A stretch of 64,000 nucleotides of DNA, from positions 124,001 to 188,000 of the IMG/VR virus record IMGVR_UViG_3300007735_000804; one strand, given 5' to 3'. The notes beneath the pieces were generated by a model. It did no database searches, was not told the DNA's origin, and saw nothing but the letters and a program-made list of their open reading frames with translations. This document shows positions 486-43,296 of this stretch, one piece after another. Numbering within the stretch: position 1 is the first letter of the stretch; every line of letters begins with the position of its first letter. The position numbers and the translations under genes were made by a program.

Positions 486-508
486 GGGTCGTTTGCTTTG
501 GTTCCCAT

Positions 509-568
509 AGTATAGAGGCAAAAGGGAGGGGGTGTGCCCCTCCGTTGTGCCATTATCAGAATTGGACC
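509..568 (-). promoter_or_regulatory. early promoter cassette with embedded terminator-like hairpin
   Basis: -10 TATACT 509-514; GGAGGGG/CCCCTCC hairpin 525-543; degenerate palindrome GTGCCATTA-TCAG-AATTGGACC 547-568. Confidence 0.6.
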
Positions 569-684: not shown

Positions 685-719
685 GGTATGATGTCGGGTT
701 GGTTGGTAAGGGTCAGGGG

Positions 720-860
720 TCAGGGTGCCAGGTGGGCAGGCGACCCACAGGAGCGGTAGAAGGCGACCATGCGCTCCGCCTCCTCCAGGGTGCGGAACCA
801 TTGCGACCGCCACTCACAGGCATTGTAGGGGGTTTGGTAGCGAACTTCGTAGCGGATCAT
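720..860 (-). CDS. small hypothetical protein (46 aa)
   Basis: Read by hand: MIRYEVRYQTPYNACEWRSQWFRTLEEAERMVAFYRSCGSPAHLAP; -10 TGcTACAAT at 885-890. Confidence 0.65.
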   Translation of the reverse strand: MIRYEVRYQTPYNACEWRSQWFRTLEEAERMVAFYRSCGSPAHLAP

Positions 861-895
861 GGCGGGTCGGTTGGTTGCTTTGGTATTGTAGCAGG

Positions 896-1060
896 TCAGG
901 CAGCGATCAGCAGGTCGTCCTCCCAGCAGATGCGATCAGAGAACAGCAGGTCCGCGATTGCCTCCAGGTCCTGGCGGTCCTGATCTGCCTTCAGGATGGC
1001 AGCACGGCACTGGGCGGCAACTTCTTCCAGGGTGTACAGGGCGTTGCAGTTGTAGCGCAT
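896..1060 (-). CDS. small hypothetical protein (54 aa)
   Basis: Read by hand: MRYNCNALYTLEEVAAQCRAAILKAD...; downstream of the promoter at 1086. Confidence 0.6.
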   Translation of the reverse strand: MRYNCNALYTLEEVAAQCRAAILKADQDRQDLEAIADLLFSDRICWEDDLLIAA

Positions 1061-1085
1061 GAGGTCGTCCGTGGTTGACTTGTTC

Positions 1086-1144
1086 AGTATAAGGGGTCAG
1101 CGGGCAATCAGGTCGCCTGCAGTGTACAGTGCCTGGGCTGTCAC
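1086..1144 (-). promoter_or_regulatory. early promoter cassette
   Basis: -10 TATACT 1086-1091; TGTACAGTG-CCTG-GGCTGTCAC 1123-1144. Confidence 0.6.
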
Positions 1145-1264
1145 ATTACGGATGGGGCGAATCGGTTCCCATAGCAGGCAGAGCAGCACAGCAACAGCAG
1201 CAACGCGGAGCATGGTAGCACGGTGGAAGTCAGCAGAGCGGGAGCAGGTTAGGGATCGCATCAT
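1097..1264 (-). CDS. small hydrophobic hypothetical protein (55 aa)
   Basis: MMRSLTCSRSADFHRATMLRVAAVAVLLCLLWEP...; ATGA overlap with the upstream stop. Confidence 0.55.
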   Translation of the reverse strand: MMRSLTCSRSADFHRATMLRVAAVAVLLCLLWEPIRPIRNVTAQALYTAGDLIAR

Positions 1265-1602
1265 GCAAACACAAATCCATCGGAAAATTCGTATTCGTTG
1301 AACACAGGAGAAGTTCCTGCCTGTCCGACAAACTTATGAACAAACCACTTAAAGTTGCGCTGAAATACACATTCGCCCTTGATTCCAAACTCCTGAAGTA
1401 AAGCATTCAGGCGCGATTTGGTGGTCTTAGTTTGATACCCACCATCAAAGATTTCAAGGGAGGTATCATCAATCTTTGCAATCAGATTGCTGTGAAGGTA
1501 TACAAAACTCACACCTTCAATGGTGATAACTTCGGTATTGTCACACTTCCAATCGCGGTTATCACGAATGGCAGCGCACATTTCAGATTCGATCTTACGC
1601 AT
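1261..1602 (-). CDS. hypothetical early protein (MRKIESEMC...)
   Basis: ORF track; start trimmed to the ATG after the promoter at 1627. Confidence 0.75.
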   Translation of the reverse strand: MRKIESEMCAAIRDNRDWKCDNTEVITIEGVSFVYLHSNLIAKIDDTSLEIFDGGYQTKTTKSRLNALLQEFGIKGECVFQRNFKWFVHKFVGQAGTSPVFNEYEFSDGFVFA

Positions 1603-1626
1603 GAGGCGTCTCTCAGTGACAAACGT

Positions 1627-1685
1627 AGTATGGCATGGATCAGGGGTCAGCACAAGGGGGTGTGTGCCACCTGTTCAACTGGCAC
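1627..1685 (-). promoter_or_regulatory. early promoter cassette
   Basis: TGcCATACT -10; GTGCCACCT-GTTC-AACTGGCAC 1664-1685. Confidence 0.8.
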
Positions 1686-2571
1686 ACTTAAACCGTTGGT
1701 TGTTGAAGTTAGCGTTAGAAAAGACCTCACGATTCACCAGTTTGAACATACCAAACTCATTGGTCATGACATAACCCTCAGCATCAATTCTGTTGCCGTA
1801 GAGGTATGCTGCAGGACCATTGTTGCGGCAGAGGTATAAGCAATCATCCTTGATTGACTTCACCAATGCCCACAAACGCAGCAGGTTAGCATCACAATCA
1901 AAGTCGTCTGGGTTGATCTCTTCCCCAGCACGAATGCAGGCATTGATCTGTTGTTTGATCTTTGCCGCCTCTTTTACACTCACAAACTCACAGAGAGTTG
2001 CAATTTGACGGGCAAAGTCACAGACTTCTTTTACATCAGCAAACGATTCTTGCCCGTGCTGAATGTATGCTTGGGGTTGCACAAATTTCACGGTGTCAGT
2101 ATCATTCCAAACGGAACGATCAGGCATGGCAACAGCATCACGAAGATCGCTCGCAGCATAGTAACAAGTGTGCGGAGCGATGATGATACGTTGCTCTACT
2201 ACTTCAGGGAACTGATAGGTGATAGTGTTGGGGGTGTATTCAGTAGATCCACCAAACCCGATAAAGTCACCTTGATAAATGGTATTTGTAAAAGGTAGGC
2301 AATCAAAACAAGCGTGAAGAATTTCTGCAACCTGTCCCTGATGATTCTGATCGATTTCATCATGGGATTCGTTGATCTTGATTTTAACTTTGTTGAAGAC
2401 ACTTTTGGTGCCTACGAAGAAGTTACCAGTGGCAGGATTGCGACCCCAGACAATAGCGGGAGCACCATCAATCTTTACACTCAAGGTGCCACGGGCAGTA
2501 AACCAATCCAGAACAGAAAGATCACCCGTCAGGATGGTATCTTCGGGGTGTTCGAGGTGTGTGTTTTTCAT
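1675..2571 (-). CDS. DUF6267-like protein with ligase/covalent nucleotidyltransferase-type motifs
   Basis: HLEHPED N-terminus, KIDG (motif I KxDG), YQGD, EGYV, KLV. Confidence 0.65.
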   Translation of the reverse strand: MKNTHLEHPEDTILTGDLSVLDWFTARGTLSVKIDGAPAIVWGRNPATGNFFVGTKSVFNKVKIKINESHDEIDQNHQGQVAEILHACFDCLPFTNTIYQGDFIGFGGSTEYTPNTITYQFPEVVEQRIIIAPHTCYYAASDLRDAVAMPDRSVWNDTDTVKFVQPQAYIQHGQESFADVKEVCDFARQIATLCEFVSVKEAAKIKQQINACIRAGEEINPDDFDCDANLLRLWALVKSIKDDCLYLCRNNGPAAYLYGNRIDAEGYVMTNEFGMFKLVNREVFSNANFNNQRFKCAS

Positions 2572-26178: not shown

Positions 26179-26811
26179 TTAACTATTTATTGGTCTGTTG
26201 ATCTGATAAACTTTCGGAATATATGTATCAATAGTTGCTTGTATATCAAAACTTTTACCTTTTCCAATTTTCAGATATTTGCCAAAATTGAGACTGGTAA
26301 AACTTTCATCTTCTGAACTCTTATATGCTATTGTGTTTGGTTCCGAATCATATATTGGATTTGTAATCCAAATATCTTTTTCGTTATCAACAAGATTAAT
26401 TGTCTCCCCTGTTGATATTTTAATTTGCTCACCATTTAAAGTTATGGGCGTATTAAAACAGACCCAATCAATTCCTTCATCTACATTTGTAGTAAATAAA
26501 GTATCCATATGTACAGAATAACACCATTTTGTATTATCTTCTAATGCTGTTATTAGTATTGCTTTTTGCGGTCTTCTATTAAAACAATCACCGGCAGATA
26601 CAATACCCGATGCATTACTATCAATTTCTCGACAATTAAGACTACCACTAGTTACAAAAGTACATCCATAATCTTCTATTTGATTGTCATCACCAATTGG
26701 AATTTTTGATAAGTCGCATGTAATAAATATTTCTCCTTTATTCATATTCCAATAAGATGTGCATAATTTATTTTTACTATCCCTAAATCTTTTAAATTCT
26801 ACTGGTTGCAT
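26179..26811 (-). CDS. hypothetical protein, possibly cupin-like
   Basis: TFVTSGSL...AGDCF...ITALEDNTKWC; coupled to the adhesin gene. Confidence 0.6.
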   Translation of the reverse strand: MQPVEFKRFRDSKNKLCTSYWNMNKGEIFITCDLSKIPIGDDNQIEDYGCTFVTSGSLNCREIDSNASGIVSAGDCFNRRPQKAILITALEDNTKWCYSVHMDTLFTTNVDEGIDWVCFNTPITLNGEQIKISTGETINLVDNEKDIWITNPIYDSEPNTIAYKSSEDESFTSLNFGKYLKIGKGKSFDIQATIDTYIPKVYQINRPINS

Positions 26812-27707
26812 TATGCTACCCCCCCTAATCTAATTCCTTCTACTAGCCAAGTTGCATAACCACTATTAACTATATAGTTTCCTCCAGATCCTCCATTGCC
26901 CCCATTGCCCCCATTGCCGTCGGTGCCCTTATTACCGCTAGATCCAAGATCTCCACCACTACCCCCAGTTCCTGATTCAGCTCTTCCGCTGTTAGAACCG
27001 CCACCACCGGCGCCGCCACTGACAAGAGTTCCACTATTGCCATCATTACCACCAGATCCACCGTTACCCGCATCATATCCTGCACCACCTCCGCCACCTC
27101 CACCATCGGAAGTATCAGTATAGCAATCTTGAGTAAAACAAGATTTAGGTATACAATAGTTTTGATATCCATATCCACCAGCGCCACCGCCACCGCCACC
27201 GCCTGCTATAGTACCATTGTTTGTAATAAAGGTGGATAATAAAAGTGTTAGAGCTGGACCACCATTACCTCCAGCATCACCATTTGTATTTCCTCCATTA
27301 CCACCTTTTCCAACAATAAAGTTATTGTTTATTAGGTATAATGAAGATCCTGCAGGAAATGTTCCAGTATCAAAAGCAGTTGATGTAGTGCTAGTAGATC
27401 CTATTACTCCATTCACCGTTACATATAATTTAACGGGTAAATTATTACTTACAATTGTTGCAATTGATTTGTACCCCCCAACAACAGATGCATTTGAAAG
27501 ATCAGAATATGCATTATAGTTTTGATTTGTACCTATTGTTCTCGTAGCGTTGATAATCTTTCCATAAAAATTAGAAAATTTTATAGGACCACTATTTGGA
27601 ATGCCTGCATCTAGTCCATAATAATTTGATAGAGATACTGGACTAGCAACACCAAATTCATCAGTTATTTCAGTAAAAGAAAGTTGCCCAGAAGATTTAA
27701 TAGTCAT
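26811..27707 (-). CDS. Gly-rich tail-fibre tip adhesin (T-even gp38-like)
   Basis: [12 protein letters not shown]...SLSNYY...P.SG.I..SNFYG N-terminus; polyglycine C-terminus; follows an S74 fibre. Confidence 0.7.
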
Positions 27708-33586: not shown

Positions 33587-33659
33587 TACCCGTGAGTGGA
33601 TTCGAACCACCGCTTGGAACATTTTAAGTGTTCTGCCTCTTCCGCTGGGCTACACGGGC
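33587..33659 (-). tRNA. tRNA-Leu(UAA), short variable arm
   Basis: GCCCGTG/CACGGGT-A acceptor, GAACA-CTTAAAA-TGTTC anticodon arm, GGTGG-TTCGAAT-CCACT T arm. Confidence 0.9.
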
Positions 33660-33736
33660 TGGTGGTCGCAGTGGGAATCTAACCCACCTTCGGCGGTTTA
33701 TGAGACCGCTGCATTCGAACAGATTGCTATACGACC
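33660..33736 (-). tRNA. tRNA with CAU anticodon (Met or Ile2), encoded CCA
   Basis: GGTCGTA/TGCGACC-A-CCA, GCGGT-CTCATAA-ACCGC, T loop TTAGATT. Confidence 0.85.
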
Positions 33737-33768
33737 TACATTCGCTATTCGCAAACAACGAATAGCAA

Positions 33769-33856
33769 TACGAGTGCCTGGATTCGAACCAGGTCAAAGC
33801 CGCTAATCTGGCGGAAAGAGTTTATAAGACTCCTCTGACTACCAAGTCTCACTCGC
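33769..33856 (-). tRNA. atypical tRNA with UAU anticodon (nominally Ile) and long variable arm
   Basis: GCGAGTG/CACTCGT-A, GGAGT-CTTATAA-ACTCT, CCGC/GCGG variable stem, CCTGG-TTCGAAT-CCAGG. Confidence 0.8.
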
Positions 33857-33866
33857 AATACAAATA

Positions 33867-34040
33867 CTACGGAGCTTCATTATTAAGCTCAGTATGTATT
33901 CGTATAAGGTCATCATCAAAGGGCATCATAACTGCTGCCTGTCCATCTTCATTGATAATACCTATGTGCTCGCCATTCTCTACACGAGTCATAAGTTCAT
34001 CCCATCGTTCCTGAAACTCTTCCACAGTGAAAACTTCCAT
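33867..34040 (-). CDS. Phd/YefM-like small protein (57 aa)
   Basis: Read by hand: MEVFTVEEFQERWDELMTRVENGEHIGIINEDGQAAVMMP... Confidence 0.6.
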   Translation of the reverse strand: MEVFTVEEFQERWDELMTRVENGEHIGIINEDGQAAVMMPFDDDLIRIHTELNNEAP

Positions 34041-34051: not shown

Positions 34052-34258
34052 TTAGTTGGACTCACCATACACGGCAAGATCAGCGTACTCAATTTGTTCG
34101 GGGTCAAGATTTGCGGTAACAACTTCCAGAACGTTCATAAACTCTTGAACGGTCTCACATTCAACCAGACGTTCACTACCTTGATCGCTCAATAGAAGGA
34201 AGGTGCGAGTGCAGACATCAATCACAATACCTTGAACGGTTTCTTGTGCGGTGCTCAT
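34052..34258 (-). CDS. conserved hypothetical protein
   Basis: ORF track; TTGACA-17-TATAAT promoter 34284-34312. Confidence 0.75.
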   Translation of the reverse strand: MSTAQETVQGIVIDVCTRTFLLLSDQGSERLVECETVQEFMNVLEVVTANLDPEQIEYADLAVYGESN

Positions 34259-34301
34259 TGAGGGTTTTCTTGATTACCCCCATATTATAAAGGGTCTTGG
34301 G

Positions 34302-34859
34302 TCAGGTGTCAAGTGGTTTTAAAAAATTCTCCAGAGGGCGATGGGCACCAAACATCCAAAGAATTCTGGGGATGTCTCCTTTTACTTCTGTAACATAATG
34401 TGGTTGCTCTGAAGCATAATAGCAGTGCAAATCTCCGACATTTATATCAATCAATTTTCCATCCACATATAAATTCCCACCACTTTCTGGTGCTTGCGTC
34501 ATTACATTGCATCTAAAAGTTGTCAGACCATCGGGTGATTTTGGATCTTGATGCTCATAAACATCACCTCCATTATATGTAACTGAAACAACAACTCCTT
34601 GGCTTCCGTGACCTAGAATTAAAGGATTATCTTGTAAATTCATAAATTTTCTAATTTTATCAGATATTTCGATTACATATAGTGGATATTTTTTACCTGC
34701 CATATGCATTCTACTTGTAAATCTTTTTTCATAAGCAAATTTACCTCTAGAAAGTCCAGGGGCAACCCAATGCTCTTTAATTCCTTGTAATGCAATATTA
34801 GATAATTTCTTACACTCTTCTTCAGTAAGAAAATTTCTAAAAATTTGAACCATATTCAA
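34302..34859 (-). CDS. 2OG-Fe(II) oxygenase (prolyl-hydroxylase-like)
   Basis: FLTEEEC, HQD...GG.L...H.V..V....R. Confidence 0.85.
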   Translation of the reverse strand: MNMVQIFRNFLTEEECKKLSNIALQGIKEHWVAPGLSRGKFAYEKRFTSRMHMAGKKYPLYVIEISDKIRKFMNLQDNPLILGHGSQGVVVSVTYNGGDVYEHQDPKSPDGLTTFRCNVMTQAPESGGNLYVDGKLIDINVGDLHCYYASEQPHYVTEVKGDIPRILWMFGAHRPLENFLKPLDT

Positions 34860-35596
34860 TAACCAAATCTTTCAAAATCCTTTTTATATAAATTTTTAAT
34901 TAATTCAATAGTAGTATCTGTTATATTTTTTTCTATTTTTTTAGATCCATTATGATGAGGATGTTCTCCCTTGATATTATAGTGCCCTCTTAAAAAATTA
35001 GAACATTCTTTAAGATTTTCAAGTTTAAAAATTTTTAATTTATTGTCGAGATTCACATCTAAAATATCATTCATTCCCAAAAACATTCTAGATGGATATT
35101 TTTCGGGTAATCCATTGGTAGCAAACTCTTTTACAAACTCATTAAAGTCTTTAATCTTGTATTCTTCTTCTTTTTTAGTCAAAGAAAATAATACAGATTC
35201 GTGATTAGAATTCGTACAATAATTCCAAATACTAAACAACCTATCAACAGGATTCCTTACGATTGAAAAAACTTTTTTACTGTCATGCTCAAAAATGTTC
35301 TTACAAAATCCTTGTCTAATTTCAGAAAGACGGTTGATAAAAAAGGTTTGCTCTCCAGAAATAAAATGAAGTAGTCCCCAATCATTTGAATCATCACTAG
35401 TTTTATATGTTGGGGGACATGTTACATAAGGTTGAAACCAGCAATCATCCGACTCATAATCTCTATAAGTAAACACCTTATCAGAAGTGCCGATAAAATG
35501 AGACATACTGATACTAGAAGATCTAGGTATGGGACAATACATCAACAGATCTTCATTCTCATCATTTAATTTTTGTTTTAGATCTTTTAGAATCAT
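34856..35596 (-). CDS. sulfotransferase family 2 protein
   Basis: 5'-PSB-like PIPRSSSIS, 3'-PB SIVRNPVDRLFS, C-terminal Y..DF..FGY. Confidence 0.8.
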   Translation of the reverse strand: MILKDLKQKLNDENEDLLMYCPIPRSSSISMSHFIGTSDKVFTYRDYESDDCWFQPYVTCPPTYKTSDDSNDWGLLHFISGEQTFFINRLSEIRQGFCKNIFEHDSKKVFSIVRNPVDRLFSIWNYCTNSNHESVLFSLTKKEEEYKIKDFNEFVKEFATNGLPEKYPSRMFLGMNDILDVNLDNKLKIFKLENLKECSNFLRGHYNIKGEHPHHNGSKKIEKNITDTTIELIKNLYKKDFERFGY

Positions 35597-35597
35597 A

Positions 35598-35777
35598 CTA
35601 CCACTTTCCTACAGGACACTTTTGACCAGAAAGTCTAACTTTTACAGGCATAAAGCATCCACACTTTTTACATTGACGAGTTGGTTTGAAAAAATGTTCA
35701 CATTGTAAACAGAATTTCATTCTATCGACCGCTTGGCGATTTTCATTATTTTCGGTATTTTCGTTATCCATATCCAT
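35598..35777 (-). CDS. small Cys-rich protein (CxxC...CxxCGC...CPxxKW)
   Basis: Read by hand: ...RMKFCLQCEHFFKPTRQCKKCGCFMPVKVRLSGQKCPVGKW. Confidence 0.75.
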   Translation of the reverse strand: MDMDNENTENNENRQAVDRMKFCLQCEHFFKPTRQCKKCGCFMPVKVRLSGQKCPVGKW

Positions 35778-35822
35778 AATCTTAAATGTTTTATTTTATT
35801 ATAAAATGTTTTGATTAATTTG

Positions 35823-36377
35823 TCAATTTGAATTATTTGATTCTGCTTCTAACTCTGCCTCTGCCTGTGCAAGAAGTTCTTCATCAGATAATGTTGTTAA
35901 AGATATCCCACCAGAAGTTAAAGGATTGTTTTCTCGTGCTTCAGTAATCAAATCCTCTACAGAAGTATTTGTTTTTTCTAAATAATCTTCTATAAAAGAA
36001 TCAAGAACGTCAAGTAATCTAGTATCACCATTTCTTGCAAGATACTTTGAAATAGAATCTAAACTGAAAGGACGATGTGATGTTCTTCCTGGAGTAAGAG
36101 GTTTTATCGCTATTCCATCTGGAGGAATTACAGGTTCTATTTTAATTGGCGTTGGATCATCAGTTTCTTTTCTTACAGAGGATCTTTCTTGACCAATATA
36201 AACATCAGGATTGCAAACATCTTCTTGTTTTTTTATAAAATCTGGATCATATTTAGATACTTCATGATCAATATCTTCTAAGCTAGCGCCAGGGGCAATT
36301 GGTACAATTGCCCAAGATCCATCTTCATATTCAACTTTAACTTGCCCTGGGGCAACATCTAAAATTTTGTATTGCAT
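35823..36377 (-). CDS. hypothetical protein (adhesin-adjacent)
   Basis: ORF track 184 aa; late-type ATAAATA upstream. Confidence 0.7.
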   Translation of the reverse strand: MQYKILDVAPGQVKVEYEDGSWAIVPIAPGASLEDIDHEVSKYDPDFIKKQEDVCNPDVYIGQERSSVRKETDDPTPIKIEPVIPPDGIAIKPLTPGRTSHRPFSLDSISKYLARNGDTRLLDVLDSFIEDYLEKTNTSVEDLITEARENNPLTSGGISLTTLSDEELLAQAEAELEAESNNSN

Positions 36378-36402
36378 AAAAAAAAATTAATTCTTGTATT
36401 AT

Positions 36403-37272
36403 TTATCCAACTCTTCCAAGACGAGTTCCTGTTGCGGACCAAGTAACATTGTTATCATTGACAATATAATAACCTGCTAAACCACCAGCGGCGCCAGCAG
36501 ATCCAGCAGTATAATTACCATTTGCTCCAGTTCCACCATTTCCCCCAGATACTCCAAAAGTTCCACCATTGCCACCAGTTCCCCCATTACCAGCATTTGT
36601 TCCGCCAGCAGCACCACCAGAACCATTAGTATTATTTCTTGCATATCCTTGACCTAATCCACCAGTACCCCCAGCACCTCCAGCATAATAGTTAGTCCCT
36701 GTACAAGTATCACAGCAAGTATAGCAGTTGCAGCATTGTCCTCCTTTACCACAACAATAGCAACCTCCGTCACCACAACAAGTCTGACAACAACCACAAT
36801 TGCAACACTCATGGCAATTACAATCATAGGTGTAGTTTTGATATCCTTGACCCCCAGTACCACCTTGTCCACCACCACCTCCGCCACCATAAATGGTTCC
36901 TGCGTTATTAATCGTCACTGCAGATCCTGCATAAATTGCATTTCCTCCAGTTCCGCCATTGGCAGCACCACCAGCACCCTGAATAGAACCATTATTAACA
37001 AGAATGAGACTCCCAGACATGCTTGAATTTATGTACAAAGCATAATCTGATACATTAGGAGACCCAACAACTACACCTGAATTAATAGTAAGTCTTTTTG
37101 GAACATTAGATGTCCAATATGATCCAAATAAAACAGCAACGTTTACATTAATTGTATTGGTGGCAATAGTAGCGGAAGCTTCATAATCTCCATATATTGA
37201 AGATCTTGCCGAATATATACTTCCCATGTAATAAATTTTTACAGTATTAGGTGAATAAAAATTACTAGGCAT
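36403..37272 (-). CDS. Gly-rich gp38-like adhesin with an 18-Cys insert
   Basis: L..VNNGSIQGAGG...G.IYGGGGGGG...RLG C-terminus like 26811-27707; CNCHECCNCGCCQTCC... insert. Confidence 0.7.
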   Translation of the reverse strand: MPSNFYSPNTVKIYYMGSIYSARSSIYGDYEASATIATNTINVNVAVLFGSYWTSNVPKRLTINSGVVVGSPNVSDYALYINSSMSGSLILVNNGSIQGAGGAANGGTGGNAIYAGSAVTINNAGTIYGGGGGGGQGGTGGQGYQNYTYDCNCHECCNCGCCQTCCGDGGCYCCGKGGQCCNCYTCCDTCTGTNYYAGGAGGTGGLGQGYARNNTNGSGGAAGGTNAGNGGTGGNGGTFGVSGGNGGTGANGNYTAGSAGAAGGLAGYYIVNDNNVTWSATGTRLGRVG

Positions 37273-37281
37273 ATAAGTTAT

Positions 37282-37725
37282 TTATTGTAACCCCAATAAG
37301 ATCTTTAATTCTTCAACGGTTAATCCTGCACTTTCTAGTTTTTGTTCTGGTGTCAATTGTACTTCTGGTGCATCTTCTATTAACCAACTTTCACTAGCAT
37401 TATCCCATTTAATTCTTTTTCTTAATTTTGGTTCTGGAGGATCTGGCGGTTGCTTTCTGGTTGCATTTGTCGGCAAAAAATTCGGATCATCAACCCATAG
37501 CTTCATTCTTGTATCAAGATCATACCAAGTTCCCCTATTGTCTTTAATAATCTTCCAGGATTGCCCATCAAATATTGGAATATAACCTGGAGAATAATTT
37601 GGTGCTTGAATCATCGTTGCATGTGCTGGTATTAACCATACATCTGGTTCATCTAATGGTGAAGGATCAGCAAAACCTTCAGAAGTAAAATACTTATACT
37701 CTGGGTGATAATTATAAATTTTCAT
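37282..37725 (-). CDS. tail fibre assembly chaperone (Tfa-like)
   Basis: IYNY...ADPSPLDEP.VWLIPAHAT...P...F....W....DNRG. Confidence 0.75.
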   Translation of the reverse strand: MKIYNYHPEYKYFTSEGFADPSPLDEPDVWLIPAHATMIQAPNYSPGYIPIFDGQSWKIIKDNRGTWYDLDTRMKLWVDDPNFLPTNATRKQPPDPPEPKLRKRIKWDNASESWLIEDAPEVQLTPEQKLESAGLTVEELKILLGLQ

Positions 37726-37734
37726 AATTTTAAA

Positions 37735-38205
37735 TTAAAAATAGTTTAAATTTATTACAACTCTAGCAGGAGCATCCGTACAACTAGTACCACAGTGCTC
37801 TAAATTACTATCAAAAATAACAACTCTATTTGCAACACTATTTACCTTTTTTCCATTTTTAAATTTTGTATACCCATCGCAAGTATTAAGATAAAAGACC
37901 GCAGTTTTCATATTTGGAAAATCAATATGATAATCGTGTTCTTCTATTGTTTCTGTTCTTGGATTTAAATTTGCTTTAACTCTAACTAAAGATTGTACGT
38001 TGAGTTTTTCTCTCAAGCACAAAATATTTGAATACAAATGTGTTGGTTGATCGTATTGATAAAAGCAATGTGTATTTTGATGGAATTTACTTCCAGTTGT
38101 AACAGATCCAAAAAACCAGGGAAAACTAGTCCCCATAACTAAACGACGAATCATATCAAATTGATTATGATTTAAAAAATCATCAATAATCTCAAAATTT
38201 GTCAT
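37735..38205 (-). CDS. 2OG-Fe(II) oxygenase
   Basis: IIDDFL, HID, GYTKF, NRVVIFD...H...R.VIN.NY. Confidence 0.85.
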   Translation of the reverse strand: MTNFEIIDDFLNHNQFDMIRRLVMGTSFPWFFGSVTTGSKFHQNTHCFYQYDQPTHLYSNILCLREKLNVQSLVRVKANLNPRTETIEEHDYHIDFPNMKTAVFYLNTCDGYTKFKNGKKVNSVANRVVIFDSNLEHCGTSCTDAPARVVINLNYF

Positions 38206-38232: not shown

Positions 38233-41200
38233 TCAATATTTTATGCAAGGAAGAAGTGCTAGGTTACGTGGACGAGTTTCAGATCCACCAGCGGGATCAG
38301 TTGTCCAATCAGTATAGAATGGGTTATTATCATTGTCATTTCCTGTTCTTGAACCTGGATAGTAATTTGGCAATCCAGAGTTACCATTATTTTCAGCGTA
38401 ATAAAAGTTTCTAAAATTGTGAGCATGTGATTGAATATCTTGAGATTGGAATGATCCAAAGGTTCTTCCACCATCTACACCTCTTCCACCATCCCAACCC
38501 CGAATGAATTCTCCACGCAAATCAGGAAGATTAAATGTTGTGCTACCATCACCTGCACCATAAGTAGTTCCAAGAATGGTAAACAATACAGAATACGTTG
38601 TTCTTGAAATTGCTGCACCATTACATGATAGATACCCAGTTGGAGCACTTGATGCTGCAAAATAAAATACAGATCCAGTAGGAACAACACTGCTGCCTAC
38701 TGAAGTGTCGTACCAAATGTCACCATCACAAAGACCAACTGGTTCTGTAGGTTGAACAAATCTTCTACCATATGCATTACTAGTTGACCCAATGCCAATA
38801 ATATTACCACCAGTTACTGAAATTGGATTTGGACAAGCATATCCAATTTGATTTACGGTAACGTTACCACCACCGCCACCACTAATTGAAACATTCACTA
38901 ATCCTGCAGATGGGCTTATTGCTGTAACTGCAGATCCAATGAAATTAATCGTTGTAATTCCAAGTTGAGTTCCTACAGTTGCACCTTCTTCTTGAATTGT
39001 AATTCCTGCAATGCCACCAGCACTAGATACTGATTTCCATGTCCAACCGCCAGAACCATTTGCAGTTAAAACAAAATTATTAGTTCCAGTCCCACCGCCA
39101 GAATCTTGAATGCTAGATGGTTTTATACTTGGAACAGTAAGCAAATCAGTAGAAGGGGTGTATGTAATTGCAGAATCTACAAATGCTGTGGTGATTCCAC
39201 TAGTAACACTAGACAAAACTAGATATCTAGATGAACCACTAGTATCAGTCGTTACATTAAGACTTGATGCTACTCCAATTGTAATAGTATTTGGATCAGA
39301 CCAAACAGGTGCATTACTTGTATCATTCCAAGTAAGAATTCTACCATTAGCATTTGGATCTGCTAAAAATGTGGTTGTATTTGACGCTGTTTGATATGGT
39401 ATAGAACCTGCAGCACCACCTTTAAGATTTGTAGCAATGCCAGAGTTATCAGCATAATTTGCTTTATCGACAATTAATCCAGTTGGATTGACCCAAGAAG
39501 GTGCTGAACCAGAATTATATTGAAGAAGTTGACCTGTAAGTGTTCCGTTTGATATGAATGCAGTTGTATTCGCTGCCGTCTGATAAGGTATTTGATAAGC
39601 AGCACCACCTTTAAGATTTGTAGCAATGCCAGCATTTGTAGCAATACCGGCATTATCCGCATAAGATGCTTTATCTACACTTAATCCAGTTGGATTTACC
39701 CAAGAGGGTGCTGAAGTTCCATTGGATTGTAGTAGTTGTCCTGAAGTTCCATTAGGAATGAATGCAGTTGTATTTGCTGCCGTTTGATAAGGAATTTGAG
39801 ACGCAATACCACCTTTAAGATTGGTAGCGATACCAGAGTTGTCAGCATAATTAGCCTTATCTACAGTAAGACCAGTTGGATTGACCCAAGAAGGTGCTGA
39901 ACCAGAGTTATATTGGAGAAGTTGACCTGTAGTAGATCCATTAGGAATAAATGCAGTTATATTCGCTGCCGTCTGATAAGGTATTTGATAAGCAGCACCA
40001 CCTTTAAGATTTGTGGAAATACCAGCATTGTTAGCATAGTTTGCTACGCTAAAATCAATACTTACATTAGATGCTGCTGTTACTCTACCTTTAGCATCTA
40101 CTGTCAAAATACCCACTTGAGTTGCAGATCCATAAGTACCTGCTACAACACCACTATTACTTAAAATAGTAGTAATGGTGACGTTCTGACTTCCATCAAA
40201 CGTAGTACCAATACCAACACCAATTACATCACCATCAATATCAATATTTCTTGGTGTTGCCAGTCTGGTTGCAGTATCAGCATTTCCCGAAATAGCGCCC
40301 ACGAAAGTGTTAGCGTAAACGTTATTCCATTTATTAGAAGTTGCACCTAAATTTAAAGTGCCATTTGTTGATGGAAGTACATTTCCACCAAATGTTGACA
40401 CACCAGCGATATTTAATTGTTTGGAGAATAAATTAGGTCCAGTAACTGTTGCAATACCCGCAAATGTTGATAAACCAGAAACAATGAGTTGAGATGTTGA
40501 AGTTCCGCTACCAGCTACTGTAAGGGTAGTTGTAGGGTTCGAAACATTGATCCCAAGAGAATTTGTGCTTGGATTATAAACAATTTCACTATCAACTAAT
40601 GCCGATGTAATACCACTGGTTCCACTTGATAAAAGTAAATATCTATCAATATTGGCATTATCAGTTGTTACTGTAAGACTTGATGCTGCACCAGTTAACG
40701 TTCCAATTATATTGGTAGCATAAAAATTATTCCAGCGAAATGATGGAGATCCTAAATTATAAGTGTTATCTACTGATGGAAGAATATTTCCTCCAAATGT
40801 TGATACACCAACGATTCTTATATTACCTTGAACATATAAAGATGATGTTGGATTTGCAGTTCCTATACCAATATTACCAGAACTATTAATAACTAAATGA
40901 TTTGCATTATCACTATTAGTAGCATTAAAGAAAATAGCATTATCCGCAGAAAGTAATCCAAATCTTGCTTTTTCTGTCCCTTGTCTAAAATATCTTACAT
41001 AAGTTTGATCTTGTGCTGCTAAACCTCTATCAATTCTAAAGATACCTTGTAAATGCAAACTGTCTTGTGGATTTGTGGTCCCTATGCCAAGATTATTTGT
41101 GTTGGGGTTATAAACAATCCCATCATCAGAAAGTGCTGTCGTAATACCACTTGTTTTACTAGACAAGACAAAATATCTAGATGTATTTGCATCATCTGTA

Positions 41201-43296
41201 GTTACTGTAAGACTCGATGCCGCTCCAGTAATATTGCCAATTATATTATTGACATAAAAATTATCCCAACGAAGTGATGGAGATCCTAAATTATAAGTAT
41301 TATCTGCTGATGGAGATACATTGGAACTAATTCGAGCATTAAATGTAACTGTATCACTATTAGCGTCTCCTAAAGTTACATTGCCTCCAACATTTAAATT
41401 CTTCTCAATACCAACACCACCTTCAACAACTAATGCCCCAGTATCTTTATTTGTAGACTCTGTAGTGTTTGATATTGAAGTAATACCAGAAACAACTAGT
41501 TGATCATTAATTGATGTAGTGCCGCCAGAAGAATCAATTGTTAAATTACCTGTTGTTGTATCAATTGTATTATCATTTGTAATTCCAATTTGAATATTAT
41601 CAATATATGCTCCGGCGAGAGTACTAACCCCAACTACTCTCAAATTTCTAGTAGTGGTTATACCAGAAACACCTAAAGTTGCAACTGTAGCAACTCCACT
41701 TACGGTGAAGTCTCTTGTAGATACGATTCCTGTAAAGAAACCATTTCTAGCAAAAAGTTCGTCATAAAAAACATCATCTTTTATGAATAAATCCCCACCA
41801 ACATATAAATCACCACCAGTTGTCGTAATACCACCTAAAGTTGCTAAATTAACTGCTCCACCAACATTGAGACGTTTTTCAATACCAACACCACCTTCAA
41901 CAATAAGAGCACCAGTATCTTTGTCCGTAGATTCAGTTGTATCATTGATATAAACGGCATCATTAATTTGGGTTGTTCCTAGAGCAGAATCTAAAATTAA
42001 ATTTCCTGTTAAAGTACTAATAGTATTAGTATCTAATTTGATATTATCAAAAGTTCCAACACCAGTAACGTTTAAATTATTAACATTAACTATAGATGAA
42101 AATGTTGAAACACCACTAACATTTAATTGATTAAGAGTAAGAGTTTGATAAACTTGAAGATTTTGAGTTGTTGTAAGACCAGTGACTCCTAGATCGCTAT
42201 TAATATTGACCTTTTGTAAAAAGGTTGATACTCCAGTTACATATAAATTCGTAACATCTATAGCGCCAATAAATTTTGATGCTGTTACAATACCAGCAAA
42301 ATATGCATTTGTACCAGTTATAAAACCTAATGTTGCAATACCAGATACAACAAGATTACGAGTTGTAGTTGTCCCTGTTACGCCAAGAGTTGAAACCGCA
42401 AGATTATCAACTGTGACACCGCCTCTAAAACTAGATATTCCTAAAACATCTAGTAAAACTCTTGGTTGCGTAGTTCCAATACCAATTCGATTATTGTTAT
42501 CATCAAACACAAAATTGGGAGCACCACCAATTAAACCAGCACTGTTATGAAATTGTATGTTTTGATATGTACCACCAGCACCTGCATTAATTGTTCCAGG
42601 ATTTGTCCAATTCAATCCACCAAAATTATTTTTAACTAAAATTTGAGAATTAGTTCCTGGTTGATTATTGGAATCATAAATTGTTCCAGTTAATCTTAAA
42701 TCTCCTTGAATATGAAGTTCTTGTGTTGGATTTGTGGTTGCTATACCAACCAAACCATCAAGAGTTGTAGTAATTACAGTGCCGCCAGCACCAACAAAAA
42801 TCCTATCACCAGCAGATAAGAGTCCTGTAGGTGAATCAAAAGTAAGTTTTGATGAGGTTGAAAATTCATTTGATGCATTGAATAAAAGTTCTTTATTATT
42901 TCCAGGAGCAAATACAGTAATTGTGACTGCTACACCTGGAGAACTATCAGGATTTAAATAACCTTTGGCAGAAACCGCTGCACCAACAAAATTTAATTGA
43001 GTAATACTACTCAATCCACCAGTCGGAGTTAAAACTCCATCGTCAAATACACTAATTGAACCAGGAATGATGCCACCCTGATTTATAATCCAATATCTAT
43101 CAGTCGCACCAGATCCAACAGAGGCAAGAATATATTGAGTTCCTGGGGGTATAGGCTTTGCTCCAATAGAAGATGGACCTACTAATGGATTGCCAAGATT
43201 TGGTTCTACTTCATCAGTATACAAATACTTGTATCTATCGTTGCGTAATTGTTCTTGCGGGGTTAGTCTAGTACGACCCGATAAGTAACGTGGCAT
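38233..43296 (-). CDS. tail fibre with C-terminal tail-collar domain
   Basis: 1687 aa; VPTGSVFYFA...CNG..ISRTTY..LF...GTTYG.GDGSTTFNLPDLRGEFIRG...ETRPRN. Confidence 0.85.
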   Translation of the reverse strand: MPRYLSGRTRLTPQEQLRNDRYKYLYTDEVEPNLGNPLVGPSSIGAKPIPPGTQYILASVGSGATDRYWIINQGGIIPGSISVFDDGVLTPTGGLSSITQLNFVGAAVSAKGYLNPDSSPGVAVTITVFAPGNNKELLFNASNEFSTSSKLTFDSPTGLLSAGDRIFVGAGGTVITTTLDGLVGIATTNPTQELHIQGDLRLTGTIYDSNNQPGTNSQILVKNNFGGLNWTNPGTINAGAGGTYQNIQFHNSAGLIGGAPNFVFDDNNNRIGIGTTQPRVLLDVLGISSFRGGVTVDNLAVSTLGVTGTTTTRNLVVSGIATLGFITGTNAYFAGIVTASKFIGAIDVTNLYVTGVSTFLQKVNINSDLGVTGLTTTQNLQVYQTLTLNQLNVSGVSTFSSIVNVNNLNVTGVGTFDNIKLDTNTISTLTGNLILDSALGTTQINDAVYINDTTESTDKDTGALIVEGGVGIEKRLNVGGAVNLATLGGITTTGGDLYVGGDLFIKDDVFYDELFARNGFFTGIVSTRDFTVSGVATVATLGVSGITTTRNLRVVGVSTLAGAYIDNIQIGITNDNTIDTTTGNLTIDSSGGTTSINDQLVVSGITSISNTTESTNKDTGALVVEGGVGIEKNLNVGGNVTLGDANSDTVTFNARISSNVSPSADNTYNLGSPSLRWDNFYVNNIIGNITGAASSLTVTTDDANTSRYFVLSSKTSGITTALSDDGIVYNPNTNNLGIGTTNPQDSLHLQGIFRIDRGLAAQDQTYVRYFRQGTEKARFGLLSADNAIFFNATNSDNANHLVINSSGNIGIGTANPTSSLYVQGNIRIVGVSTFGGNILPSVDNTYNLGSPSFRWNNFYATNIIGTLTGAASSLTVTTDNANIDRYLLLSSGTSGITSALVDSEIVYNPSTNSLGINVSNPTTTLTVAGSGTSTSQLIVSGLSTFAGIATVTGPNLFSKQLNIAGVSTFGGNVLPSTNGTLNLGATSNKWNNVYANTFVGAISGNADTATRLATPRNIDIDGDVIGVGIGTTFDGSQNVTITTILSNSGVVAGTYGSATQVGILTVDAKGRVTAASNVSIDFSVANYANNAGISTNLKGGAAYQIPYQTAANITAFIPNGSTTGQLLQYNSGSAPSWVNPTGLTVDKANYADNSGIATNLKGGIASQIPYQTAANTTAFIPNGTSGQLLQSNGTSAPSWVNPTGLSVDKASYADNAGIATNAGIATNLKGGAAYQIPYQTAANTTAFISNGTLTGQLLQYNSGSAPSWVNPTGLIVDKANYADNSGIATNLKGGAAGSIPYQTASNTTTFLADPNANGRILTWNDTSNAPVWSDPNTITIGVASSLNVTTDTSGSSRYLVLSSVTSGITTAFVDSAITYTPSTDLLTVPSIKPSSIQDSGGGTGTNNFVLTANGSGGWTWKSVSSAGGIAGITIQEEGATVGTQLGITTINFIGSAVTAISPSAGLVNVSISGGGGGNVTVNQIGYACPNPISVTGGNIIGIGSTSNAYGRRFVQPTEPVGLCDGDIWYDTSVGSSVVPTGSVFYFAASSAPTGYLSCNGAAISRTTYSVLFTILGTTYGAGDGSTTFNLPDLRGEFIRGWDGGRGVDGGRTFGSFQSQDIQSHAHNFRNFYYAENNGNSGLPNYYPGSRTGNDNDNNPFYTDWTTDPAGGSETRPRNLALLPCIKY
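39410..40030. repeat. about 60-aa tandem module x3-4 (TNLKGG...IPYQTAANTTAF...APSWVNPTGL.VDKA)
   Basis: Near-identical DNA copies inside the 1687-aa fibre. Confidence 0.8.

What the first reader, a model, noticed from the sequence alone, without database searches (positions are those of the whole stretch)
34302..38205. Tailoring-enzyme cluster wrapped around the Cys-rich adhesin: possible RiPP-like virion modification system
Seen, in transcription order: collar fibre, 2OG-Fe(II) oxygenase, Tfa chaperone, Cys-loop adhesin, unknown, CxxC/CxxCGC/CP mini-protein, sulfotransferase, second 2OG-Fe(II) oxygenase. All are co-oriented, very AT-rich, with late-type ATAAATA motifs near 38225, 37279 and 36400. 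The other adhesin is followed by a coupled cupin-like gene (26179-26811). Known: such oxygenases are common in cyanophage tail islands but their substrates are unassigned. Inference: hydroxylation followed by sulfation (plus a metal/redox chaperone) chemically diversifies the receptor-binding tip, as a precursor + tailoring-enzyme cluster would.
Basis: partly seen in the sequence, partly recalled or inferred. Interest (0 to 1): 0.68.

Follow-up and report, generated by a model that had tools for sequence, protein, structure and literature searches.

The report
Oxygenase–sulfotransferase genes beside phage adhesin
A freshwater cyanophage carries, right behind the genes for its receptor-binding tail-fibre tip, a coupled hydroxylase-like oxygenase and sulfotransferase plus a small six-cysteine protein; related phages repeat the arrangement, so these enzymes may chemically modify the fibre tip, but this is not shown.

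Summary
The gene list is confirmed. On the minus strand lie a 1687-aa fibre with a Collar domain, a 156-aa 2OG-oxygenase-like protein, a Tfa chaperone, a Gly-rich gp38-type adhesin with 18 Cys in a 44-aa loop, a 184-aa protein, a 59-aa six-Cys mini-protein, a Sulfotransfer_2 enzyme and a second 2OG oxygenase.

The cluster is not one unit. It combines three cassettes that occur apart in related uncultured phages:
- fibre, oxygenase and Tfa;
- adhesin, 184-aa protein and mini-protein;
- a tightly coupled sulfotransferase–oxygenase pair.

The mini-protein and the two enzymes sit behind a perfect sigma-70 (early-type) promoter, not a late motif.

- 34 of 43 dereplicated relatives of the second oxygenase lie within four genes downstream of a gp38-like adhesin.
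- The sulfotransferase follows a fibre-tip gene in five of six architectures.
- The mini-protein tracks Cys-bearing adhesins.
- Sulfotransferase-linked adhesins are about twice as Tyr-rich as other adhesins of the family.

The second oxygenase folds like prolyl hydroxylases. No substrate is shown, and "RiPP-like" is not supported. Iyer et al. (2010) already predicted hydroxylation then sulfation of tail-collar or Gly-rich proteins in bacteria. I rate this a new variant of a known, still unproven, kind.

The parts
38233..43296 (-). 1687-aa tail fibre with a C-terminal Phage Tail Collar domain (aa 1541-1598)
   Evidence: ORF list; Pfam Collar E 9.3e-23; the homologue in L001 is annotated PF07484
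38224..38230 (-). ATAAATA motif 18 nt upstream of the 156-aa gene (possible late-type -10 element)
   Evidence: the motif is not enriched in the window
37735..38205 (-). 156-aa DSBH / 2OG-Fe(II)-oxygenase-like protein ('o156'); the PHROG label 'DNA endonuclease V' is probably wrong
   Evidence: Pfam 2OG-FeII_Oxy_3 E 2.5e-4, below cut-off; phrog_274 E 1e-47; no PDB sequence hit to T4 endonuclease V; invariant H93, D95, H137, R148; hhalign to the second oxygenase E 1e-3 with the motifs aligned; Atlas look-alike clusters are viral, one of them carrying PF13640 in 15% of its members
37282..37725 (-). 147-aa Tfa-type tail fibre assembly chaperone
   Evidence: phrog_105 E 6.5e-17 and phrog_35518 E 2.5e-16
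36403..37272 (-). 289-aa Gly-rich (25% G) gp38-type adhesin
   Evidence: phrog_10745 E 2.9e-40; adhesin-family ('c3') HMM E 3e-27; alignment A4 shows conserved Gly-rich motifs flanking a hypervariable insert
36697..36828 (-). Hypervariable Cys/Tyr-rich loop of the adhesin (aa 149-192; 18 Cys in 44 residues)
36400..36406 (-). ATAAATA motif 22 nt upstream of the 184-aa gene
35823..36377 (-). 184-aa protein ('u184'), constant partner of Cys-bearing adhesins; its N-terminus resembles the ~130-aa 'c8' proteins that follow adhesins in related phages; probably an assembly factor
   Evidence: no Pfam or PHROG hit; found in the adhesin-u184-mini triplet in L001, L112-L124 and L190; hhalign to c8 E 1.7e-4, probability 50%
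35798..35826 (-). Perfect sigma-70 consensus promoter (TTGACA-17-TATAAT), 20 nt upstream of the mini-protein ATG
   Evidence: 2 matches in 64 kb against 0.12 expected; an 11/12 version sits at the same place in L001
35598..35777 (-). 59-aa Cys6 mini-protein (C-x2-C ... C-x2-C-x-C ... C-P-x2-K-W), zinc-ribbon-like
   Evidence: phrog_13558 E 7e-16 and DUF6171 E 3e-4, below cut-off; invariant C23, C26, E27, C36, C39, C41, K46, C54, P55, W59; at least 589 IMG/VR relatives
34856..35596 (-). 246-aa PAPS-type sulfotransferase (Sulfotransfer_2); 5'-PSB loop PIPRSSS with invariant Arg25; 3'-PB motif RNPVDRLFS
   Evidence: Pfam 41.1 bits, cut-off 22; alignment A1; AlphaFold2 model pLDDT 91.8; nearly all strong structural matches are sulfotransferases, the best being HS 2-O-ST at Z 10.5
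34302..34859 (-). Prolyl-hydroxylase-like 2OG-Fe(II) oxygenase ('O185'); likely start is the ATG at 34853 (183 aa), 2 nt after the sulfotransferase stop codon
   Evidence: invariant H103, D105, H154, R165; AlphaFold2 model pLDDT 93.5; Foldseek top hits are PHD, P4H and vCPH; gene junction read
34284..34312 (-). Second perfect sigma-70 consensus promoter; marks the downstream border of the enzyme cassette and drives the DUF7294 68-aa gene
   Evidence: conserved in L001 (11/12) and at the same position in L021, L032, L112 and L124

Best explanation
The region is a tail-fibre accessory island of a freshwater T4-like cyanophage (Kyanoviridae-like). It is built from three separable cassettes.

1. 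A long fibre ending in a Collar domain, followed by a small DSBH oxygenase and the fibre's Tfa chaperone.
2. A receptor-binding cassette: a gp38-type Gly-rich adhesin whose hypervariable loop is packed with Cys and Tyr, a 184-aa assembly factor, and a 59-aa six-cysteine zinc-ribbon-like protein. The last occurs only with Cys-bearing adhesins. I infer that it helps load metal onto, or fold, the Cys loop.
3. A closely abutted enzyme pair: a PAPS-dependent sulfotransferase and a prolyl-hydroxylase-like 2OG/Fe(II) oxygenase. In this phage the pair is transcribed together with the mini-protein from a strong sigma-70-type promoter.

Most likely mechanism (inferred, not shown): the enzymes are made from early in infection and use host 2-oxoglutarate, O2, Fe(II) and PAPS. 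They modify newly made fibre-tip proteins post-translationally. The oxygenase hydroxylates side chains. The sulfotransferase adds sulfate either to the Tyr-rich adhesin loops or to hydroxyl groups made by the oxygenase. This would change the charge and chemistry of the receptor-binding surface.

Shown here: gene identities, catalytic motifs, folds, promoters and the recurrent neighbourhoods. Inferred: the substrate, the order of reactions and the role of the mini-protein.
For: Enzymes:
- Sulfotransfer_2 hit above the Pfam cut-off, with PSB and PB motifs conserved in 21 homologues.
- The sulfotransferase model matches sulfotransferase folds almost exclusively among its strong hits.
- The second oxygenase has an invariant HxD...H...R motif, and its best structural matches are prolyl hydroxylases (Dictyostelium PHD, P. 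putida P4H, PBCV-1 collagen P4H, PHD2).

Neighbourhoods:
- Of 43 dereplicated (<=90% identity) IMG/VR relatives of the second oxygenase with at least 3 kb upstream, 34 have a Gly-rich gp38-like adhesin within four genes upstream on the same strand. 37 have a fibre gene or another protein over 450 aa within six genes. I estimate, without testing it, a few percent for random placement in a ~200-kb genome.
- The intervening genes and adhesin subtypes vary, so this is not just one frozen synteny block.
- The sulfotransferase (two subfamilies) abuts or overlaps the oxygenase gene, by a 4-nt overlap or a 2-nt gap, in window/L001, L004/L013, L021-23, L024-30 and L032.
- It directly follows an adhesin or collar-type tip gene in five of six architectures, including L007/L010/L012/L194, where a different oxygenase family (2OG-FeII_Oxy_5) precedes the adhesin.

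Mini-protein: adhesins near it have a median of 7 Cys (n=16) against 1 (n=56), Mann-Whitney p=7e-7.

Tyrosine: sulfotransferase-linked adhesins have a median of 7.3% Tyr (n=7) against 3.3% (n=39), p=1e-4. The PSB loop carries an invariant Arg, as tyrosylprotein sulfotransferases do (Arg78 of TPST2; PMC10951654).

Precedent: Iyer et al. 2010 predicted hydroxylation then sulfation of tail-collar and Gly-rich proteins from bacterial operons (PMC2938197). The upstream fibre here carries a Collar domain.

The whole cluster is intact at about 99% identity in an independent riverine metagenome.
Against: - No direct evidence of any modification exists, and I found no paper showing hydroxylated or sulfated phage fibres.
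- The enzyme genes sit behind an early-type sigma-70 promoter, whereas fibre genes are expected to be late.
- The sulfotransferase-oxygenase pair also occurs among secreted-protein genes with no adjacent adhesin (L004, L013).
- The adhesin-u184-mini triplet usually lacks both enzymes.
- Most adhesins linked to the second oxygenase have no sulfotransferase (3 of 43).
- The sulfotransferase is structurally closer to heparan-sulfate O-sulfotransferases (Z 9-10.5) than to TPST (Z 6.4).
- The adhesin family has no conserved proline, which a prolyl hydroxylase would need.
- The P4H-like fold also includes small-molecule enzymes (WelO5, HalD) and AlkB among the hits.
- The neighbourhood and composition statistics use related sequences, so they overstate independence.
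- Tail-fibre regions are known hot spots for accessory genes, and tRNAs and a Phd-like gene lie in the same gap.
Confidence: 0.42

Rival explanations
1. The sulfotransferase and oxygenases are auxiliary or host-directed enzymes. They would act on a non-virion substrate, such as host envelope polysaccharide or lipid (for example receptor masking) or a small metabolite. They lie in the fibre island only because that region tolerates and exchanges accessory cassettes.
For: - A perfect early-type sigma-70 promoter lies in front of mini-sulfotransferase-oxygenase.
- Architecture B places the pair among signal-peptide proteins, an HExxH protein and a secreted nuclease, with no adhesin.
- The best structural matches of the sulfotransferase are carbohydrate O-sulfotransferases.
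- Contig breakpoints at about 34297-34320 and 35804 show cassette swapping at the promoter borders.
- tRNAs and a Phd-like gene share the same gap.
- Iyer et al. suggested secondary-metabolite roles for cyanophage dioxygenase arrays. Sullivan et al. suggested 2OG-level or repair roles.
Against: - The adjacency of the second oxygenase to adhesin genes is very strong and repeated (34 of 43) across varied gene orders.
- The sulfotransferase follows a tip gene in five of six architectures.
- Sulfotransferase-linked adhesins are Tyr-enriched.
- The phage genome has no clear glycosyltransferase and no PAPS-synthesis gene that would suggest a polysaccharide pathway.
Confidence: 0.33
2. The Cys6 mini-protein is itself the substrate or obligate partner of the enzymes, as in a small RiPP-like peptide pathway. 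The oxygenase and sulfotransferase would tailor it, and the product would act with or on the adhesin.
For: - The mini gene abuts the sulfotransferase gene in both possible orders (window and L001; L007 and L010).
- More distant mini homologues lie directly upstream of P4H-like oxygenases in 12 loci.
- K46 and P55 are invariant and could be hydroxylation sites.
Against: - The mini-protein is conserved along its whole length as a six-Cys fold, with no leader/core split and no variable core.
- Pfam and PHROG scans found no recognition domain, protease or exporter in the cluster.
- Its closest relatives occur with the adhesin and u184 but without any enzyme.
- It has no conserved Tyr, Ser or Thr for sulfation.
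Confidence: 0.08
3. The DSBH proteins are nucleic-acid repair or modification enzymes (AlkB-like, or 'endonuclease V' as labelled) and are unrelated to the fibres.
For: - The PHROG label of the 156-aa family is 'DNA endonuclease V'.
- AlkB and ALKBH5 appear among lower-ranked fold hits of the second oxygenase.
- A DNA-repair role has been suggested in the cyanophage literature.
Against: - The 156-aa protein has no Pfam hit to the pyrimidine-dimer glycosylase family and no PDB sequence hit to T4 endonuclease V.
- It carries an HxD...H...R oxygenase motif.
- The top fold hits of the second oxygenase are prolyl hydroxylases.
- Tight coupling to a sulfotransferase has no rationale in DNA repair.
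Confidence: 0.06

Closest known systems
Predicted bacterial hydroxylation-sulfation operons for tail-collar and collagen-like Gly-rich proteins (Iyer, Abhiman, de Souza, Aravind 2010, NAR; PMC2938197)
   Same: A classical 2OG/Fe(II) dioxygenase and a sulfotransferase are encoded next to a protein with a phage tail-collar domain and a Gly-rich protein. The proposed logic is the same: hydroxylate, then sulfate, an extracellular fibrous protein.
   Different: - Those operons are cellular. [quoted passage not shown]
- Here the system is in a lytic cyanophage, and the oxygenases are P4H-like.
- No PAPS gene is present.
- The Gly-rich protein is a gp38-type adhesin, and a Cys6 mini-protein is part of the set.
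- Neither system has been tested experimentally, as far as I could find.
Viral collagen prolyl 4-hydroxylase of PBCV-1 (vCPH, PDB 5c5t) and bacterial or eukaryotic PHD/P4H enzymes
   Same: The second oxygenase shares the fold (Foldseek E about 3e-7, TM about 0.6) and the HxD...H...R iron/2OG site. vCPH is a virus-encoded enzyme thought to hydroxylate virus-encoded Pro-rich proteins.
   Different: Sequence identity is only 12-18%. No Pro-rich or collagen-like substrate lies next to it, and the linked adhesins lack a conserved proline. The substrate residue is unknown.
Tyrosylprotein sulfotransferases (TPST1/2; tick TPST)
   Same: A PAPS-dependent sulfotransferase fold with Arg, not Lys, at the catalytic position of the 5'-PSB loop. 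The candidate substrates are Tyr-rich loops.
   Different: Structural similarity to TPST (Z 6.4) is lower than to heparan-sulfate 2-O-, 6-O- and 3-O-sulfotransferases (Z 9-10.5). Pfam places the protein in Sulfotransfer_2. Few acidic residues lie around the adhesin tyrosines.
gp38 adhesins of T2/T6/S16-type phages (Gly-rich motifs separating hypervariable receptor-binding loops)
   Same: Small Gly-rich distal-tip adhesins with conserved poly-Gly motifs and hypervariable inserts, encoded next to the fibre and chaperone genes.
   Different: The hypervariable insert here is a 44-residue stretch with 18 Cys and many Tyr. It comes with a dedicated 184-aa protein and a Cys6 mini-protein. The Pfam GP38 match is only sub-threshold, and only for the paralogue.
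Tandem 2OG-dioxygenase arrays of marine cyanomyoviruses (e.g. Syn9 gp49-gp58; Iyer et al. 2010, Sullivan et al. 2010)
   Same: Several unrelated DSBH oxygenases cluster in T4-like cyanophage genomes, often beside structural genes (also seen in S-SCSM1).
   Different: Those arrays were interpreted as secondary-metabolite, 2OG-level or DNA-repair functions, and no sulfotransferase partner was described. Here the oxygenase family is almost absent from cultured phages: one 30%-identity hit in 50,697 records.

Membership tests
2OG-Fe(II) oxygenase superfamily (second oxygenase, 34302-34859) | HxD/E...H iron triad plus a basic residue binding the 2OG C5 carboxylate | tested here: met
   H103, D105, H154 and R165 are invariant in 35 homologues
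2OG-Fe(II) oxygenase superfamily (second oxygenase, 34302-34859) | Double-stranded beta-helix fold similar to solved members | tested here: met
   AlphaFold2 pLDDT 93.5; at least 500 Foldseek hits at E <= 1e-3, led by PHD, P4H and vCPH. There is no Pfam hit.
2OG-Fe(II) oxygenase superfamily (156-aa protein, 37735-38205) | Profile match and conserved triad | tested here: inconclusive
   Pfam 2OG-FeII_Oxy_3 at 22.4 bits, below the cut-off of 27. H93, D95, H137 and R148 are invariant in 7 sequences. hhalign to the second oxygenase gives E 1e-3 at 21% probability.
T4 endonuclease V / pyrimidine-dimer glycosylase (PHROG label of the 156-aa protein) | Sequence similarity to T4 DenV or a Pyr_excise profile | tested here: not met
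   No such Pfam hit at E <= 0.1. phmmer against all PDB sequences at E <= 1 finds no endonuclease V.
PAPS-dependent sulfotransferases (Sulfotransfer_2) | Profile match above the curated cut-off | tested here: met
   41.1 bits against a cut-off of 22, covering aa 14-246
PAPS-dependent sulfotransferases (Sulfotransfer_2) | 5'-phosphosulfate-binding strand-loop-helix and 3'-phosphate-binding motif (R-x-P...R...S) | tested here: met
   P22-x-P24-R25-[ST]-x-S and R114-N-P-x-x-R119-L-F-S122 are invariant or nearly so in 21 sequences. In the model, strand 17-20, a loop and helix 28-34 form the expected element. Arg replaces the usual Lys, as in TPST.
PAPS-dependent sulfotransferases (Sulfotransfer_2) | Sulfotransferase activity and acceptor identity | not testable with these tools
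   Fold neighbours are heparan-sulfate O-sulfotransferases, followed by cytosolic STs and TPST. This does not define the acceptor.
RiPP biosynthetic cluster | Short precursor peptide with a leader and a variable core | tested here: not met
   The proposed 'precursor' is a 289-aa gp38-type structural adhesin. The 59-aa mini-protein is conserved throughout as a Cys6 fold.
RiPP biosynthetic cluster | Leader-recognition (RRE) domain, leader protease or exporter | tested here: not met
   No such Pfam or PHROG family appears in any of the eight proteins.
gp38-type Gly-rich adhesins | Conserved Gly-rich motifs separating hypervariable segments, in a small protein encoded beside the fibre and chaperone genes | tested here: met
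   Alignment A4. The paralogue at 26811-27707 hits phrog_2056 'tail fiber protein; host specificity' at E 1e-17 and Pfam GP38 at E 1.5e-4, below cut-off. The 289-aa protein matches the same family HMM at E 3e-27.
gp38-type Gly-rich adhesins | Location at the fibre tip and receptor binding | not testable with these tools
   No isolate or structure is available.
Iyer-Aravind hydroxylation-sulfation system for collar or Gly-rich proteins | Co-encoded 2OG dioxygenase, sulfotransferase and a tail-collar or Gly-rich protein | tested here: met
Iyer-Aravind hydroxylation-sulfation system for collar or Gly-rich proteins | beta-hydroxylase or PhyH-type oxygenase families and a PAPS synthetase in the operon | tested here: not met
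   The second oxygenase is P4H/PHD-like. No APS-kinase match exists in the 213-kb genome.

The most novel reading that the evidence does not exclude
Some cyanophages would tune host recognition through enzyme-installed chemistry on the receptor-binding tip as well as by mutating the adhesin. The adhesin loops would carry sulfate esters, either sulfotyrosine or sulfated hydroxylated residues. A metal-thiolate or disulfide Cys knot in the loop would be assembled by a dedicated Cys6 mini-protein. The sulfotransferase-oxygenase pair would be a mobile 'tip-tailoring' cassette that can be plugged behind different adhesins.
Probability: 0.22. Interest if true: 0.85.

Novelty: new variant of a known kind. 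Interest (0 to 1): 0.58.

Why it matters
Phage host range is normally explained by the sequence of receptor-binding proteins. If fibre tips are hydroxylated or sulfated by phage enzymes, host recognition would have a chemical layer that sequence alone does not reveal. Predictions of host range from genomes would then miss it.

It would also give a function to part of the large, unexplained set of 2OG oxygenases in cyanophage genomes, and it would test a 2010 prediction about collar and Gly-rich proteins.

The practical value here is a set of concrete, testable pairs: adhesin with sulfotransferase and oxygenase, and Cys-bearing adhesin with mini-protein. These come from neighbourhood data on about 250 loci.

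If the enzymes instead act on host or metabolite substrates, the finding is an ordinary accessory-gene island.

Tried and rejected
- Complex prediction of the adhesin (A4) with the mini-protein (A3) gave no verdict (score 0.00). It counts neither for nor against binding.
- tblastn of the adhesin and the sulfotransferase against 50,697 phage records found nothing. The second oxygenase found only a 30%-identity relative in S-SCSM1. Cultured phages therefore could not be used for synteny.
- megablast and blastn of the region matched only a tRNA segment and short fragments.
- The sulfotransferase alignment found only 3 loci in IMG/VR. In the metagenome collection it found 4 close and 12 distant (25-32% identity) loci. 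The distant ones sit in unrelated contexts and were not used.
- The two 'RNA-Seq' runs that hold parts of the region are probably DNA, and they are contigs only, so nothing can be said about expression.
- 'Cupin-like' for 26179-26811: no Pfam or PHROG hit. hhalign to the small-cupin family gave 13% probability, and the Atlas model is poor (pLDDT 0.56) with TM below 0.5 to cupins. This is inconclusive.
- hhalign found no relation between Tfa and the c19 or c74 chaperone-like families, between mini and c17, between u227 and the second oxygenase, or between the Oxy_5 family and the second oxygenase.
- The collar-like nature of the short 'c16' tip proteins could not be established.
- No paper mentions DUF6171.
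- Phage-encoded PAPS synthesis or glycosyltransferases, which would point to a polysaccharide pathway, were not found.
- I considered the late-promoter claim. It is kept only as a weak possibility for the upstream genes.

Full report
**What is in the sequence.** The window is part of a complete 213-kb viral record. That record carries psbA and a Kyanoviridae Gp96-family gene, so it is a T4-like cyanophage. Near-identical DNA recurs in river, lake and sediment metagenomes of at least seven studies. One riverine data set covers the whole cluster at about 99% identity.

All genes of the finding lie on the minus strand:
- a 1687-aa fibre (38233-43296) with a Pfam Collar domain near its C-terminus;
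- a 156-aa protein, o156 (37735-38205);
- a 147-aa Tfa-type chaperone (37282-37725; PHROG E 6.5e-17);
- a 289-aa Gly-rich adhesin (36403-37272);
- a 184-aa protein, u184 (35823-36377);
- a 59-aa Cys6 protein, mini (35598-35777);
- a 246-aa sulfotransferase, ST (34856-35596);
- a 183/185-aa protein, O185 (34302-34859).

**Gene identities.**
- ST passes the Pfam Sulfotransfer_2 cut-off (41 against 22 bits). Its 21 metagenomic homologues keep a P-x-P-R-[ST]-x-S phosphosulfate loop and an R-N-P-x-x-R-L-F-S 3'-phosphate motif. A confident model (pLDDT 91.8) has sulfotransferases as nearly all its strong structural matches. The best are heparan-sulfate 2-O-, 6-O- and 3-O-sulfotransferases (Z 10.5 to 9.2). 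Tyrosylprotein sulfotransferase ranks lower (Z 6.4).
- O185 has no Pfam hit, but H103, D105, H154 and R165 are invariant in 35 homologues. Its model (pLDDT 93.5) is most similar to prolyl hydroxylases: Dictyostelium PHD, P. putida P4H, the PBCV-1 collagen P4H and PHD2. WelO5 and AlkB rank lower.
- o156 is less certain. It has a sub-threshold 2OG-FeII_Oxy_3 hit, an invariant H93-x-D95...H137...R148 motif, and a full-length but weak profile alignment to O185 in which these motifs coincide. The PHROG label 'DNA endonuclease V' is not backed by any similarity to T4 endonuclease V.
- The adhesin belongs to the same Gly-rich family as the second adhesin of the window (26811-27707), which has PHROG 'host specificity' hits and a sub-threshold Pfam GP38 hit. 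In alignment A4 the conserved Gly-rich motifs flank a hypervariable insert. Here that insert is 44 residues with 18 Cys and several Tyr.

**The cluster is modular.** Contexts of homologues in metagenomes and IMG/VR show three separable cassettes.
- The closest relatives of mini (at least 70% identity; L112-L124, L190) always lie in the triplet adhesin-u184-mini, without ST or O185.
- ST and O185 form a tightly abutted pair, with a 4-nt overlap or a 2-nt gap. The pair is found with the triplet (window, L001/L002), directly behind other adhesins or collar-type tip proteins (L021-L023, L024-L030, L032; a second ST subfamily with a canonical PKTAG loop), and once among secreted-protein genes with no adhesin nearby (L004/L013).
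- In a further architecture (L007, L010, L012, L194) ST directly follows a Cys- and Tyr-rich GP38-like adhesin. That adhesin is preceded by a different oxygenase family (2OG-FeII_Oxy_5) and followed by mini, an unknown protein and a SAM methyltransferase.
- o156 relatives occur in tandem oxygenase arrays behind Gly-rich proteins and a chaperone-like gene.
- Metagenomic contigs break away from the window sequence at about 34297-34320 and 35804, that is, at the cassette borders.

**Transcription signals.** The motif is not enriched in the window, the full T4 late motif is absent from the region, and one copy is only 6 nt from the adhesin ATG.

The only two perfect sigma-70 consensus promoters (TTGACA-17-TATAAT) in the 64 kb lie here; 0.12 are expected by chance. 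One is 20 nt upstream of mini. The other is just after O185, in front of a DUF7294 gene. Near-consensus versions are conserved at both places in L001.

In T4-type phages sigma-70 promoters are the early class, and TATAAAT-like motifs are the late class (as used by Sullivan et al. 2010). So mini, ST and O185 form their own, probably early, unit. This argues against a simple picture of one late operon.

**Does the neighbourhood support virion modification?**
- The O185 family has more than 120 metagenomic members and at least 146 IMG/VR loci. It is nearly absent from cultured phages.
- After dereplication at 90% identity, 34 of 43 loci with enough upstream sequence have a Gly-rich gp38-like adhesin within four genes upstream on the same strand. 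33 of 43 have a small Cupin_2-like gene beside O185, 10 have a further PF13640 oxygenase, and only 3 have ST.
- The genes between the adhesin and O185 vary (four different chaperone-like families), and so do the adhesin subtypes. The association is therefore not one frozen block.
- Adhesins next to mini have a median of 7 Cys (n=16). Other Gly-rich adhesins have a median of 1 (n=56; Mann-Whitney p=7e-7).
- Adhesins linked to ST have a median of 7.3% Tyr (n=7, about four lineages), against 3.3% in other family members (n=39, p=1e-4). Against Cys-bearing adhesins that lack ST the figure is 4.1% (p=0.003).
- ST family 1 carries Arg at the catalytic position of the phosphosulfate loop. Tyrosylprotein sulfotransferases do the same (Arg78 of TPST2, Arg74 of tick TPST; PMC10951654).

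These statistics use related sequences and are leads, not proofs.

**Comparison with what is known.**
- Iyer et al. 2010 (PMC2938197) described bacterial operons that combine 2OG dioxygenases, sulfotransferases and either tail-collar-domain proteins or Gly-rich collagen-like peptides. They proposed hydroxylation followed by sulfation. In the same paper the tandem dioxygenases of cyanophages were attributed to secondary metabolism.
- Sullivan et al. 2010 (PMC3037559) proposed 2OG-level control or DNA repair.
- I found no paper that links cyanophage oxygenases or sulfotransferases to fibre modification, and none that shows hydroxylated or sulfated phage fibres.
New elements are the ST-O185 pair, its attachment to gp38-type adhesins, and the mini-protein.
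- Nothing defining a RiPP system is present.

**Verdict.** The anatomy is solid. The mechanism is inferred. I consider post-translational modification of fibre-tip proteins the most likely single explanation (about 0.4).

Against it stand:
- the early-type promoter;
- the architecture without an adhesin;
- the carbohydrate-sulfotransferase-like fold;
- the lack of a conserved proline in the adhesins;
- the general tendency of accessory genes to gather in fibre islands.

The main rival is action on a host or metabolite substrate (about 0.33). The phage has no APS kinase, so PAPS must come from the host. It has no clear glycosyltransferase. The complex prediction for adhesin and mini gave no verdict and is not used.

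Noticed in passing
window 36697-36828 (- strand; adhesin aa 149-192): The hypervariable loop of the adhesin has 18 Cys in 44 residues (CC, CxC and CxxC runs) with flanking Tyr. This is metallothionein-like in composition. Homologues have loops of different length with 4-13 Cys at the same position.
   Followed up: partly
window 35798-35826 and 34284-34312 (- strand): These are the only two perfect TTGACA-17-TATAAT promoters in the 64 kb, against 0.12 expected. They bracket the mini-ST-O185 unit. The second is conserved in front of the DUF7294 gene in several related loci.
   Followed up: yes
window 37735-38205; PHROG phrog_274; L015 (Synechococcus phage WH25-B): The family annotated 'DNA endonuclease V' in PHROGs and in deposited cyanophage genomes shows no similarity to T4 endonuclease V. 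It has an HxD...H...R oxygenase motif, so the label is probably a propagated mis-annotation.
   Followed up: partly
window 33587-33857: A cluster of three tRNA genes (Leu-TAA, Met-CAT, Ile-TAT) lies between the two fibre operons. The tRNA-Ile segment is 98% identical to Synechococcus phage S-SRM01, which was the only megablast hit of the region.
   Followed up: no
window 34297-34320 and about 35804: Contigs from several metagenomes match up to these points and then continue into unrelated sequence. This indicates cassette replacement exactly at the promoter-bearing intergenic borders.
   Followed up: partly
L032 6057-7010; L021 3514-3807; L028 3442-3783: A second sulfotransferase subfamily is fused in L032 to an N-terminal domain of about 110 aa. 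That domain is a separate ORF directly upstream of the sulfotransferase in other loci. It has no family hit.
   Followed up: partly
L035-L099 (e.g. L085 6615-6974): A small (~119 aa) Cupin_2-like protein with an HxH...H motif sits beside the O185 oxygenase in 33 of 43 dereplicated loci. It is absent from this window's genome.
   Followed up: partly
L130-L191 (e.g. L138 4941-5177): More distant, longer (~78 aa) relatives of the Cys6 mini-protein lie directly upstream of PF13640 P4H-like oxygenases in 12 loci and of fibre-like genes in 9.
   Followed up: partly
L182 1657-2661: A 334-aa protein near mini and P4H-like genes has long Y-N-P-P-P-Y-D-N-T-Y repeats followed by a Hint/intein-like CFVFGTEILMADG motif. 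It could be a prolyl-hydroxylase substrate.
   Followed up: no
window 1-2000: GC content is 0.55 here against about 0.33-0.43 elsewhere. The ORFs include DUF6267 (1675-2604) and Kyano_Gp96 (1261-1653) family genes.
   Followed up: partly
window 33867-34040 and 34052-34258: A Phd/YefM-antitoxin-like 57-aa gene (sub-threshold hit) and a DUF7294 68-aa gene follow the enzyme cassette. The same pair recurs at this position in related loci and, by annotation, in phage WH25-B.
   Followed up: no
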